64,000 nt of DNA from Malacoraja senta (lineage: Eukaryota), in the NCBI GenBank assembly GCA_038087875.1, contig CM075977.1, positions 361,398,001 through 361,462,000 of the forward strand, written 5' to 3'. The position numbers and the translations under genes were made by a program. Under the pieces are notes generated by a model. That model saw only the letters and a program-made list of their open reading frames with translations, searched no databases and was not told the DNA's origin. Shown one piece after another: positions 32,269 through 36,864 of this stretch (within the stretch, counting starts at the first letter, position 1; the number at the start of each line of letters is the position of its first letter).

Positions 32269-33255
32269 CCGTATTTCTTGGCAATGAAGACGCTATATTT
32301 TACCCAAAAATAAGGCACGAAAATCTACCTGCGTCTTGGAGGCCGAAGGTTAGATTGTTAGCCGAGAAAGATAGACTTGGCTATCCTTCAGTACAGCAAC
32401 ATCAAGAACGATGTTGCTGTACTGAGGAATAGCCAAGTCTATCCCTCATTGTTGGCAGCTGATGGGAAGCGGCTGTAAAGCGGGAATCAGCTGTAAAAGG
32501 ACAACGCCGCTGGGGGGGGATGAGTTCCTTTCACAGCGTGTGGGGAGTCTGGCCCGGGTCAGCACAGCCTGGGCTGCACAAAGTAGTAAACTTGGCTGGG
32601 CCGCCAGGGTTAAAGTTGCGGAAGGACAGGAGCATTGAGAAGGAGGGGGACGGGGATCATGCCAGCAACTCATTCAGTAGCTCGGGTAGCTGCGAGCGGC
32701 CGCCAGGATCGGACAGCCCGCCAGCCAGCCACAGTGGCCTTTGGCACAGGCGCAACCGGTGGAGGTGGTGCACATCTCATATGCATATGTGACGAATAAA
32801 CTTGACTTGACATGACTTGACTTGGAGGTGGTGGGTTGCTACTGGGTGGAAGNNNNNNNNNNNNNNNNNNNNNNNNNNNNNNNNNNNNNNNNNNNNNNNN
32901 NNNNNNNNNNNNNNNNNNNNNNNNNNNNNNNNNNNNNNNNNNNNNNNNNNNNNNNNNNNNNNNNNNNNNNNNNNNNNNNNNNNNNNNNNNNNNNNNNNNN
33001 NNNNNNNNNNNNNNNNNNNNNNNNNNNGAGCCAGGAAGTCCCCGTCCCTCATACCTGAACCGCACAGTGCATTGTGGGACAGGCAAAGATGGAGGCTCCC
33101 TGGTCCTCATTGCCTCCTTGAAGGAGTTTCACATCTTCTTTTCTACTGACTAAACCAAAACCTTGATCCTGTCCCGCCAGCCTTTTTCAAAATTTAGCAA
33201 CTCAAATGGGGGTGTGTATTCGTCGCAGTTGCGTCTTCATTGCTGGGAAATACGG
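32269..33255. mobile_element. Tc1/mariner-superfamily (Tc2/pogo-like) non-autonomous element, contains gap
   Basis: TA|CCGTATTTCTTGGCAATGAAGACGC...GCGTCTTCATTGCTGGGAAATACGG|TA; 25-bp TIRs, 22/25 identical. Confidence 0.88.
32853..33027. other. Assembly gap
   Basis: Run of N. Confidence 1.
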
Positions 33256-33515
33256 TAATGTTACAGAATATTCAGCCTCTGACCTTTTCTCAGCATAGTT
33301 TATAGATCGAGAGCCTGAGTGCCTCGTTTTTAGGGTCCTTACCCAAAACGTCAATTTTCCATGTTCTCCAGGTGCCTGATGCTGGATGCTGCCTGATCCG
33401 CTGAGTTACTCCAGCACTTTGTGCCTTTTTATAGTTTGCAGGTAACTGGTGTACTTAGGATAATGATCAATTCTGACACCCAGGACATCAGAAAAGGGAC
33501 ATTTGGTTTGGGTAT

Positions 33516-34648
33516 TGTAGATCAAACAGTATTGCTGACTGAATCCGTGACTGGTTTTGTCTGCATAGACCTCCGCCAGATTGAATCAAATAAGACCATG
33601 GTTCCGGACACAACTCATTGACCGTGCCCATATGGTCATATCCCTCCTGGGTTTGGAGACGGACCACCTGGCCCTCCGACAGTGGTTGGAGAGGACAACT
33701 AGAACGATCGTAGTACGCCTTCTCCGTCTGTCTTTTACGCTGCAGACGCGCCCGAACCACCTTGGGCTCGCAGACTTGTGGCTGGAGCAGCTGCTTCGCG
33801 ACTGGAAGAGTAGTCCTGGTCTGTCTCGACATGATTCGCTGAGCCGGCGAACCGAGTGTGGGATCACGTGGAATGTTGCGGAGATTGAGAAGATCCCAAA
33901 ACACGTCAGACCCGGCCCTGCTGGACCTCTCCATGAGCTCCTTTGCACTGCGGACAGCTCGCTCAGCCAGCCCGTTCCACTGGGGGTACCCGGGACTGCT
34001 GGTGATGTGCCTAAAATCCCATTCCTTTGCAAAGTCCTTGAAATGCTGGCTTGTGAATTGGCCACCATTGTCAGGCATGAGGGTTTGAGGTACCCCATGG
34101 ACCGAAAAATGCCTCGCAAGTTTCTTGACGACCGCTGCAGATCGATCTCAAACCACCAGGAGTAAGAGTCAACCAGGACCAAGTATTGGTTGCCATGCCA
34201 GTCGAAAATGTCAGTAGCCACCATAGACCACGGCAAGTCAGGAACCGGGTGCTGCAAAAGGAGCTCTTTCTGTTGATGTGGAGCCATGCTGTTGCACACA
34301 ACACAGGACTGCACCCTCTAGTGTATATAATCTGACATGGCAGGCCAGAAAAACATGCTCTTTGCTCGTTGCACCGTAGCTTCTGAACCAGGATGACCTT
34401 CGTGTACGGGGTCAAAGTACTTCTGTTGGAGTGAAGCCGGAATCACTGCCTTGTGGCCCTTTTTGATAACCCCACCTTCATTGTTGGGGGGGCCAGGTGG
34501 TTCGTCTCCAAACCCAGAAGGAGTATGAACGTATGGGCACGGTCAAGGAGGTGTGTCCAGAACCAAGGTCTTATTTGGTTCAATCTGGCAGCGGTCTATA
34601 CGGACAAAACCAGTCACGGATCAAGTCAGCAATACTGCTTGATCTACA
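33516..34648 (-). mobile_element. Gypsy-type integrase pseudogene bracketed by 160-bp inverted repeats (Ginger-like architecture)
   Basis: VHEGHPG...SCVVC zinc motif, VATDIF, PDNGGQF-35 aa-GLAERAV across frameshifted ORFs; IRs 33516-33675 and 34489-34648 (about 141/160 identical, no indels). Confidence 0.85.
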
Positions 34649-36864
34649 AGTATCTCAGTTGGTGATGGGGTAGGGTTGACAAATCAATTGCTTCGTTATT
34701 CTCTTTCAGTTTTGCATCTGGATAGCCGTCACAGTGGATTTCAGCTCCACTTTATGAGCTGTTTTACAGTGCTGTTCCTCATTGCTTTTACTGCTATCCT
34801 GTCACATTTCATGTACCAATTGAAATCCTCAACTCACATTCCCATTTCTCACTCCATCTTGATGTTCCTGTTTAAAACCACTGGACACTGTGCTCCACAC
34901 CACTTCTTCCCACTGTCGTGTCACCATTACTGTCAGAAGCGGGCAGAGTGGTCTCCTGACTAACACTTGAGAAACAGGCACTTGCGTCTGCACTGAAAGG
35001 CTCTTCTCTCCCTTGAAAAACGTTTCTAAACCACAATGTCAGGAGAAGAAAATTCGATTTTCTGATACCAGATTAGGGCAAGTTTACATTGGGTTCTATT
35101 TATGGACCTTCGTCTTTTCATCATTATTGATTCAATTTCCTTCCTGTCCTTTCCAAATATTCTTGAGTGCAGGAGGGGGAACAGTGACTGCCAATTTTTC
35201 TCCACATTCCAGAAGCAATGTTGCACCCTGTAAAATTATCCTAGCTCCTATCTATTAACTTGGTCAGGTAGGCAGAGTATTATTCCTTAACAATAAAATA
35301 TGATATTTTGTACCTTTTATTTCCATCTTTTTAGAGACTGCAAATTAAACTACCAAATTGTGATATGTTGAATGTAATAAATAACTGCCAAAGTGACACA
35401 TTGTAATAGGCAAAGAAAATCACAAAGCATGGATATGTTTTAAGCTTCGAGCAGATGTGGACAAGCTTGCACATAAAGCAATTCAGAGCTAAATTGTATT
35501 GTCCTGTTTGCACATTTGCTTCCATTACGGACCATATCTCTTTTAAACAGATGTTGTATTACAAAGAAACGATTCCTTCACAAAATATGTTACTTAAATA
35601 GATGTATTATCAACGCATGTTCTTTTAAAAGATCCATTATATTACAAGAACATGCTTCCTTAAAAATATCCATATTACAATGCAAGTCTTCTTAAACAGG
35701 TGTCGCCATTATCAAGGTTTGTTCCATTTAACCAGACATTCTCCATTAGCAGGGTGCCAATTATTTGGTCGGTTCTATTATATATTTGAAGTAAATGTCT
35801 CTGAGAAATAGCAAATCACACAGAACACTGATAAATGCACAACTCGAGGCCGAGAAATGTTCTGCTTGGATCAGGATTACGCCCGGATCAGAATTTCTAT
35901 AAATTGCAGGTGACTGCAAATCTTCCCTGCAAAGCTCATTTAATCATTCAACCATCAATTCAATCTCAGCAATAACCAACAGCAATCACTTAGCCGAAAT
36001 ATATACTTTACATGAATGTGATTAGATTTCTACAATAGGTGAAAATCAGAGTTAAGAGTATTCACTATGCAGAGCTTTAAGTACATGATATGCTTACTGT
36101 AGCCCAGGTAAAATACAGTGCTTTAGTACCTGGAGATCTACACCAGGAATCTATTCAGATTAATTCATGCTTCAGGCCATTAAAAATGTAGGCCATTGTA
36201 ATCAAAGTTATATCACTGCTTGACAACTGGCATGAACAGCTCCACCACACTATCAGACAGAAACCAGACACAAACTCATCAACAGAGTGAGGAAGAACAT
36301 TAGGTCACTACCTCTTCCCTGACACAACATTGTCACAAGTAGGAGTGACAGGCAATGGAAATTCTTTCACCTCCACTGGACCATTAAGTTTATTGTAGGG
36401 TGGAATATTTCCAATTAAGTTCTTGGAAATGCCTCTCAGTCTCATCAGCAAGACAACCCTTTCACTCTCTCACCACAATCCCTGCCCACTCCCACATTTT
36501 GAAATGGCTGTGAATAAATGTAAGGAGAGGTTATTCTAATTGGGGGGTTAATGAACATGTATTTACCCATTACATTTCTATTTCAGTCATTTGTTCGCCA
36601 ATTTCATGACACCCAACATACCCCCAGACATGGAACCCCTTTGTTGAATTTGTTAGCGATTTCATGATTGGAATCAGCCTAAAAAAGTCTGGACTCACTG
36701 AACATCTTGCAGAAGTATAATGCTTGTCCCCTAAAAAATATGTTAGATATTGAATTACATCAATGTGATTGTTTTTCATAAAATGTATATTTTCTGTAAT
36801 TGTCCCCTTTTCATACCACATTGAAGGAAAAATTAAGGTAGAACAATAACATTAGGGAGATTAA

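What the first reader, a model, noticed from the sequence alone, without database searches (positions are those of the whole stretch)
33516..34648. Lone Gypsy-type integrase enclosed by TGT...ACA inverted repeats and a probable TSD (Ginger-like element)
Seen: the segment holds essentially only an integrase (VIPASL linker, HEGH...CVVC zinc motif, D-D35E triad, C-terminal region) with no RT, RNase H or LTR nearby. Its last 160 bp recur inverted at the other end (about 88% identity by hand count, no indels). Termini are TGTAGATCAA...TTGATCTACA, flanked by GGTAT/AGTAT (or GTA/GTA if each IR is 1 bp longer). Most of the IR is itself integrase-coding sequence. Established: Ginger DNA transposons use Gypsy-related integrases with TGT-starting TIRs and 4-5 bp TSDs. 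Inference: either a TIR element built from an LTR-retrotransposon integrase, or a one-off fold-back duplication. This copy is frameshifted and dead.
Basis: partly seen in the sequence, partly recalled or inferred. Interest (0 to 1): 0.8.

Follow-up and report, generated by a model that had tools for sequence, protein, structure and literature searches.

The report
Integrase-pasted fold-back Gypsy integrase fragment
A dead 1.1-kb piece of an ordinary skate Gypsy retrotransposon, holding only the integrase gene, carries an inverted copy of its own tail at the other end and was most likely pasted in by a Gypsy integrase that took a look-alike site inside the gene for the element's normal end, so it is a fossil of a replication accident and not a Ginger-type DNA transposon.

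Summary
A 163-nt inverted repeat (88% identity, about 176 nt if one indel is allowed) encloses a frameshifted Gypsy-type integrase on the minus strand. There is no RT, RNase H or LTR anywhere in the 64-kb window.

The Ginger reading does not hold. The integrase is 58-68% identical to ordinary 1,000-1,350-aa Ty3/Gypsy Pol proteins. A little-skate paralog, 82% identical in DNA, has RNase H directly upstream of the integrase. Paralog contigs from other species diverge from the window at the inner junction. No second copy with this architecture was found.

The new result concerns the ends. Both termini read TGTAGATCA, and TGTAGA occurs nowhere else in the element. All six intact relatives I could fetch have LTRs starting TGTAGA (mostly TGTAGAACA). 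Three of them have perfect 5-bp target duplications. The window element is flanked by GGTAT and AGTAT.

The unit was therefore most likely inserted by a Gypsy integrase acting on two copies of a cryptic LTR-end mimic in the pol tail. The two copies were brought onto one insert by a strand switch or by end-joining at a CAnTG microhomology.

The insertion is old (arms 12.8% apart), is shared by at least two related species, and is dead.

Earlier notes of this scan describe similar fold-back Gypsy insertions elsewhere in this genome. This one differs in using internal cryptic ends.

The parts
33511..33515 (.). Left copy of the probable 5-bp target-site duplication (GGTAT).
   Evidence: Read directly. 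It matches the right copy at 4 of 5 positions; chance probability 0.019. Related elements make 5-bp TSDs.
33516..33524 (+). Left terminus TGTAGATCA, a mimic of the clade's LTR 5' end (TGTAGAnCA).
   Evidence: Six of six related elements have LTRs starting TGTAGA. The hexamer occurs in the element only at the two termini.
33515..33677 (-). Left arm of the inverted repeat. It is the true 3' end of the integrase gene: the C-terminal domain with the decayed RRNRRHI motif plus about 10 further codons.
   Evidence: The skate paralog carries the outer 45 nt in the same arrangement after its integrase.
33516..34147 (-). Integrase core and C-terminal part in an open frame (second D and E of the D,D35E triad; C-terminal domain).
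   Evidence: Translation; Pfam rve; 58-68% identity to the fish Gypsy Pols among the hits, 46-50% to more distant ones.
34140..34141 (-). Frameshift: a 19-nt deletion relative to the skate paralog.
   Evidence: Pairwise alignment with L001 and the frame change seen.
34135..34483 (-). Integrase N-terminal part: linker, HHCC zinc finger and first catalytic D. Homology to ordinary copies starts at 34483.
   Evidence: Pfam Integrase_H2C2; 87% protein identity to skate protein P0206; DNA alignment.
34318..34320 (-). In-frame stop codon inside the zinc-finger region.
34479..34483 (.). Inner junction with CAnTG microhomology, where the inverted arm meets the start of the integrase fragment.
   Evidence: Alignments of the junction to the left arm and to the skate paralog overlap on these bases. 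Four paralog contigs run on unlike the window beyond 34471-34480.
34487..34649 (+). Right arm: an inverted duplicate of the last about 163-176 nt of the integrase fragment.
34640..34648 (+). Right terminus TGATCTACA, the reverse complement of the left terminus.
34649..34653 (.). Right copy of the probable target-site duplication (AGTAT).
   Evidence: The arm-to-flank junction is bridged by contigs of two other species at about 95% identity (records 7 and 24).

Best explanation
This is a single, old, dead-on-arrival by-product of an ordinary Ty3/Gypsy LTR retrotransposon of a skate-like genome. A DNA made from the element's integrase region ended, at both ends, in the same short sequence from the pol tail (...GATCTACA-3'). 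Read from outside, that sequence is TGTAGATCA, a close mimic of the clade's normal LTR end. A Gypsy integrase treated the two ends as LTR ends and inserted the piece, making a 5-bp target duplication.

The two like ends came to lie on one insert in one of two ways. Either a strand switch during DNA synthesis copied back to the 5' end of a like strand, or two truncated molecules were joined head to head at a CAnTG microhomology.

Shown: Gypsy origin; the sharp common outer end; the match of the termini to the clade's LTR ends; the TSD length of the clade; presence of the insertion in other species. Inferred: that integrase did the joining, and how the inverted copy arose.

The unit has no start codon upstream of the zinc finger. 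There is no sign that it ever moved again.
For: Gypsy origin: the nearest proteins are RT-RNaseH-H2C2-rve Pols, at 58-68% identity over the whole integrase for the fish elements. The skate paralog L001 is 81.6% identical in DNA over 33858-34483, with RNase H directly upstream.

Sharp common outer end: both arms stop at the same nucleotide and the flanks are unrelated.

End mimic: LTRs of six related elements (L004-L009) all start TGTAGA, four of them TGTAGAnCA (three TGTAGAACA, one TGTAGAGCA), and one ends TTTCTACA. The window termini are TGTAGATCA/TGATCTACA, and the hexamer occurs nowhere else in the 1,133 bp. Its frequency in the window is 1.3-3.0e-4 per position.

TSD: three of the six relatives have perfect 5-bp TSDs and one has a 6-bp match. 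Here the flanks are GGTAT/AGTAT, 4 of 5, p=0.019. One change is expected from the 6% per-arm decay.

Placement: in the tree the window integrase falls among the fish elements with TGTAGA LTRs, and a TGTAGA element also sits on the other side of the midpoint root.

Inner junction: microhomology at 34479-34483.

One-off: paralog contigs reaching 34471-34480 continue unlike the window (records 4, 5, 6, 31). The outer 46 nt of the right arm is close to single-copy depth (table 2).

Age: arm K2P is 0.128, against about 4-5% flank divergence to species that share the right junction.
Against: Only one other DNA copy of the family (skate L001) could be read. The family's own LTR termini in this genome were therefore not seen; they are inferred from teleost and other relatives.

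The TSD is imperfect, and a 3-bp GTA/GTA reading is also possible.

Retroviral-type integrases normally need the CA close to a DNA end, and I cannot show what made a DNA end at this site.

In the skate copy the site reads CTGCGG, not CTACAA, and what follows it there could not be identified as pol tail, PPT or flank.

A genome-wide copy count was not possible. The depth argument rests on summed contig depths in 74-nt bins.
Confidence: 0.6

Rival explanations
1. It is one copy of a real, multi-copy TIR transposon family (a newly born Ginger-like element). In this reading a Gypsy integrase gene sits between terminal inverted repeats that its own product recognises, and the unit moved as DNA.
For: The architecture fits: integrase only, 163-176-nt TIRs, TGTNR-type ends identical to the clade's LTR ends, and a 5-bp flanking repeat. 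Bao et al. 2010 (PMC2836005) propose that Ginger1 could have arisen from an LTR element whose integrase became flanked by inverted ends. A whole-genome copy search could not be run.
Against: Every paralog contig listed that reaches the inner junction continues into ordinary upstream sequence. The skate paralog is an ordinary RNaseH-IN copy. Right-arm outer depth is near single copy, for example 54 against 47 in run X6. There is no ATG upstream of the zinc finger in the open frame. No close lone-integrase proteins appear in three protein searches.
Confidence: 0.1
2. An ordinary truncated Gypsy fragment lay here first. Later a local genomic accident (templated insertion, replication template switch or fold-back repair) added an inverted copy of its far end.
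For: Microhomology at the inner junction is typical of such repair. The event is unique as far as seen.
Against: A copied stretch would have to stop exactly at the old element/flank boundary. That boundary would also have to be the only TGTAGA mimic in the element, and the new flank would have to repeat 4 of 5 bases of the old one. The joint chance is well under 1e-4. The arms end abruptly with no inverted flank.
Confidence: 0.1
3. There was no integrase step. Either two 5'-truncated reverse transcripts sharing a 3' end were made head to head at a staggered break by another reverse transcriptase (as in twin or dual target priming), or a free cDNA fragment was captured at a break by end-joining.
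For: The tail-out, head-to-head layout with a microhomology junction and a common outer end is what dual target priming would give. The skate copy is also 5'-truncated and loses similarity at the same point.
Against: There is no poly(A), microsatellite tail or LINE 3' end at the termini. The exact match of the ends to the clade's LTR end and the clade-typical 5-bp duplication would be coincidences.
Confidence: 0.12

Closest known systems
Ginger1 DNA transposons (Bao, Kapitonov and Jurka 2010, PMC2836005)
   Same: A Gypsy-type integrase (H2C2, DDE, C-terminal domain) lies between 40-270-bp terminal inverted repeats that start TGTNR.
   Different: Ginger1 transposases are at most about 40% identical to Gypsy integrases, carry a C-terminal OTU or Ulp1 protease domain, make 4-bp CCGG/CCGT TSDs, and occur as families. 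Here the integrase is 58-68% identical to real Gypsy Pols, there is no extra domain, the flanking repeat is an AT-rich 5-mer, and only a single copy is known. The arms are made of the integrase gene itself.
Ginger2/TDD and GingerRoot transposons (PMC2836005, PMC6839031)
   Same: Integrase-related transposase, TG...CA ends, and TIRs of 50-300 bp.
   Different: Their transposases are distant lineages. TSDs are 4-6 bp at RTATAY sites (Ginger2) or 6-8 bp (GingerRoot). They occur as families of many copies.
Complex or aberrant LTR-retrotransposon insertions made by abnormal template switching and then integrated (Sabot and Schulman 2007, PMC1950507); fold-back Gypsy insertions noted elsewhere in this genome by this scan (s1-195530, s1-175031)
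   Same: A rearranged product of reverse transcription is inserted by the element's own integrase with a normal TSD and is dead on arrival.
   Different: Those cases end in true LTR ends. Here both ends are a cryptic look-alike site inside pol, and no LTR sequence is present at all.
L1 twin priming and Penelope-type head-to-head 5'-truncated copies (own knowledge, not tested)
   Same: An inverted 5'-truncated segment is joined head to head through microhomology.
   Different: Those are target-primed by non-LTR reverse transcriptases, have variable TSDs, and end at the RNA 3' end. Here the ends are LTR-end mimics with a 5-bp duplication.

Membership tests
Ty3/Gypsy LTR retrotransposon (pol fragment) | Integrase with an HHCC zinc finger and D,D35E core; nearest relatives have the domain order RT-RNaseH-IN. 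| tested here: met
   Pfam H2C2 and rve. The relatives carry RVT_1, RT_RNaseH, H2C2 and rve in that order. The skate paralog has RNase H directly upstream.
Ty3/Gypsy LTR retrotransposon (complete element) | Two LTRs, a PBS and a PPT flanking gag-pol. | tested here: not met
   No direct repeat of 100 nt or more within 8 kb either side. No RT or RNase H in 64 kb. No convincing PBS motif. This is a fragment, not an element.
Ginger1 | The transposase belongs to the Ginger1 lineage, at most about 40% identical to Gypsy integrases in the DDE region. | tested here: not met
   58-68% identity to bona fide fish Gypsy Pols over the whole integrase; threshold taken from PMC2836005. No Ginger sequence was available for a joint tree.
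Ginger1 | TIRs of 40-270 bp starting TGTNR. | tested here: met
   163-176-nt arms starting TGTAG.
Ginger1 | 4-bp TSD, CCGG or CCGT. | tested here: not met
   Flanks are GGTAT/AGTAT. No 4-bp match lies next to the termini.
Ginger1 | C-terminal OTU or Ulp1 protease domain. | tested here: not met
   Only H2C2 and rve were found in the pieces. The frame ends 8 codons outside the arm.
Ginger1, Ginger2 or any TIR transposon family | Several copies with the same termini at different sites, each with its own TSD. | tested here: inconclusive
   No such copy appears among the contigs laid, in the skate locus or in the window. A whole-genome search was not possible.
Ginger2/TDD | 4-bp (5-bp in TDD-4/5) TSD at AT-rich RTATAY targets; a transposase lacking the GPY/F region. 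| tested here: inconclusive
   The target is AT-rich (GGTAT) but is not RTATAY. The integrase keeps the Gypsy C-terminal domain.
GingerRoot | 6-8-bp TSD and 100-150-bp TIRs. | tested here: not met
   No 6-bp match at the flanks.

The most novel reading that the evidence does not exclude
Gypsy integrases in this lineage can mobilise LTR-less DNA bounded by short end mimics. This unit, an integrase gene between inverted copies of a site its own product recognises, would then be a natural snapshot of the step by which an LTR retrotransposon turns into a Ginger-type DNA transposon, and possibly the founder or a member of a small undetected family.
Probability: 0.08. Interest if true: 0.75.

Novelty: new variant of a known kind. 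Interest (0 to 1): 0.4.

Why it matters
Bao et al. 2010 left open how an LTR retrotransposon could become a Ginger-type DNA transposon. They guessed that inverted LTR ends came to flank an integrase gene.

This fossil shows that the raw material arises naturally. It is an integrase-only segment with inverted ends that copy the clade's LTR end, apparently inserted by integrase. In this case the ends are an internal look-alike site, not LTRs.

It also suggests that about 9 terminal bases are enough for a Gypsy integrase to accept a DNA end in vivo.

As a single dead copy in a genome where the scan has already noted other fold-back Gypsy insertions, its value is as a clean example and a lead. It is not a new class of element.

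Tried and rejected
- Metagenome scan for the terminal 20-mer (TCAGCAATACTGYTTGATCT): two hits, both unrelated chance matches.
- Protein searches with the integrase piece, with P0010 (integrase region) and with skate P0206: only one close family member was found (P0206, little skate). No closer full-length Pol and no lone-integrase family appeared.
- Exact look-up of the window's 196-aa ORF: not on record.
- One relative (P0219) had no DNA available.
- Search for the clade's PBS (CATGGTGTCAGAAG, up to 2 mismatches) in the window: two matches, no more than chance.
- The search of earlier findings by sequence: blank.
- Depth per bin from read laying could not settle how many paralogs carry the outer 45 nt. 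The left outer bin is inflated by a very abundant repeat next door, and contigs spanning the C-terminus map preferentially to the left arm.
- A PBS-like sequence after the cryptic end in the skate copy: by eye only about 7 of 12 positions match TGGTGTCAGAAG, which is not significant, so I dropped it.
- Assembly artefact: rejected. The arms differ at 19 sites, and other species' contigs bridge the right junction.
- A pol tail or LTR after the site in the skate copy: none detectable by tblastn or repeat search.

Full report
**What is there.** The inverted repeat is real. Its arms are 33515-33677 and 34487-34649, 163 nt long and 88% complementary, and it is the only repeat in 32500-35700. The 19 differences are mostly transitions (13), five of them at CpG, and K2P is 0.128. 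If one indel is allowed, arm homology continues inward to about 34474.

Between the arms, on the minus strand, lies an integrase. The linker, HHCC finger and first catalytic D are in one frame, from 34483 down to about 34141. The second D, the E and the C-terminal domain are in another frame, from 34147 down to 33516. Pfam recognises Integrase_H2C2 and rve. The gene has one in-frame stop (34318-34320) and one frameshift. The frameshift is a 19-nt deletion relative to the closest paralog.

The left arm is the gene's true 3' end. The right arm is an inverted duplicate placed upstream of the gene's 5' end.

**Surroundings.** tblastn with eleven full-length Gypsy Pols finds nothing else in the 64-kb window. 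There are no direct repeats of 100 nt or more within 8 kb and no convincing primer-binding site.

**Which family.** HMMER against 1.8 billion representatives gives 18,870 hits. The best are a mix of short fragments and Pols of 1,300 aa or more. The long hits carry RVT_1, RNase H, H2C2 and rve in the Ty3/Gypsy order. Fish Pols are 58-68% identical over the whole integrase.

The closest relative is little-skate protein P0206, 87% identical to the N-terminal piece. Its locus L001 (GCA_028641065.1) aligns to window 33858-34483 at 81.6% DNA identity. It continues upstream into RNase H, so it is an ordinary pol fragment.

Ginger1 transposases are at most about 40% identical to Gypsy integrases (PMC2836005). 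This integrase is therefore a piece of a normal LTR-Gypsy family and not a Ginger lineage.

**Copy number and age.** Contigs of four runs from four species labels were laid at 80% identity or more. The integrase interior is multi-copy and the right flank is single-copy.

Four paralog contigs that reach 34471-34480 run on with sequence unlike the window (records 4, 5, 6, 31). Ordinary copies therefore do not have the inverted arm there. The outer 46 nt of the right arm has close to single-copy depth (table 2).

Contigs of two other species bridge the right arm/flank junction at about 95% identity (records 7 and 24). The insertion therefore predates their split, which fits arms that are 12.8% apart.

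I could not run a genome-wide search, so "unique" is supported but not proven.

**The outer ends.** Both arms stop at the same nucleotide, and the flanks beyond them are unrelated. The skate paralog carries the outer 45 nt directly after its integrase (87-90% identity), so this is pol sequence and not foreign DNA. In intact relatives pol continues 60-75 codons past the RRNRRHI motif. The stop point lies about 10 codons after that motif, which puts it inside the pol tail.

**The key result.** I fetched six intact relatives with their flanks. L004-L008 come from five teleosts. L009 comes from an unnamed assembly. Their Pols are 48-87% identical to P0225.

All six have short LTRs (168-244 bp) that begin TGTAGA:
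- TGTAGAGCA
- TGTAGAACA (three elements)
- TGTAGATTA
- TGTAGAACT

Each LTR is preceded by a polypurine tract. Five of the six are followed by the primer-binding site TGGTGTCAGAAG or a one-base variant right after an ...ACA end. In L005 the LTR end could not be fixed. One LTR ends TTTCTACA. Three elements have perfect 5-bp target duplications (GCAGC, GGTGC, GTACC) and one has a 6-bp match.

The window element begins TGTAGATCA and ends TGATCTACA. TGTAGA/TCTACA occurs nowhere else in its 1,133 bp and at only 1.3-3.0e-4 per position in the window. The five bases outside the termini are GGTAT and AGTAT, a 4-of-5 match with chance probability 0.019. One change is what the observed decay predicts.

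In a tree of the integrase core the window sequence sits among the fish elements with TGTAGA LTRs. Resolution is weak, but a TGTAGA element also lies on the other side of the midpoint root.

**Interpretation.** The unit was inserted as a whole, and its two ends were accepted as LTR ends by a Gypsy integrase. A later local duplication would have to stop exactly at the old boundary, on the only end mimic, and recreate the flank. A target-primed or break-capture origin would leave the end mimic and the 5-bp repeat as coincidences.

How the two like ends came together is inferred only. The inner junction has CAnTG microhomology. That fits either a strand switch that copied back to the 5' end of a like strand, or head-to-head joining of two truncated molecules. 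Template-switch products that are then integrated are known for plant LTR elements (PMC1950507).

There is no ATG upstream of the zinc finger in the open frame, so nothing suggests an autonomous gene.

**Relation to earlier scan notes.** All of these were read as leads and not tested here. The same genome has a fold-back Gypsy derivative with inverted LTRs and a 5-bp TSD, which a follow-up agent judged a reverse-transcription accident (s1-195530). It also has a gag-protease unit between two inverted LTR 5' ends (s1-175031), and a one-LTR Gypsy closed by a cryptic inverted terminus inside the integrase gene with a 5-bp TSD (s1-170640).

The present case belongs with these. It differs in having no LTR sequence at all: both ends are an internal look-alike site.

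**Verdict.** Ginger membership is rejected. The best reading is an integrase-pasted, one-off, dead fold-back fragment of an ordinary Gypsy element. It is a new variant of a known kind of accident and is of moderate interest as a natural model for how Ginger-type elements could start.

Noticed in passing
window 33346-33430: An extremely abundant short repeat lies 85 nt left of the element. Summed contig depth is about 1e7, against 25 for single-copy DNA, in all four runs. It has sharp common ends near 33385 and 33423-33430. Copies are also present in the skate locus.
   Followed up: partly
L004-L009 (loci of related elements): Gypsy elements whose Pols are only 48-87% identical, from five teleosts and one unnamed assembly, share the LTR start TGTAGA. 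Five of them also share the primer-binding site TGGTGTCAGAAG (or a one-base variant) directly after the LTR end. LTRs are very short, at 168-244 bp.
   Followed up: partly
L001 9685-9924 and 7016-7246: The skate paralog is interrupted between RNase H and integrase by a roughly 240-bp hairpin-like insert with 97-nt arms, 91% complementary. A second copy lies 2.7 kb upstream. It looks like a MITE.
   Followed up: no
L001 10860-11011: In the skate paralog about 290 nt of integrase C-terminal coding sequence are replaced by about 150 nt of AT-rich unrelated DNA, while the last 45 nt are kept. The copy sits in an intron of a sortilin/VPS10-domain gene.
   Followed up: no
L009 4743-4748 and 9262-9267: This element shows a 6-bp flanking match (AGCATT), where its relatives have 5-bp target duplications.
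   Followed up: no
window 32853-33027: A run of 175 N lies about 490 nt left of the element. It was left untouched.
   Followed up: no
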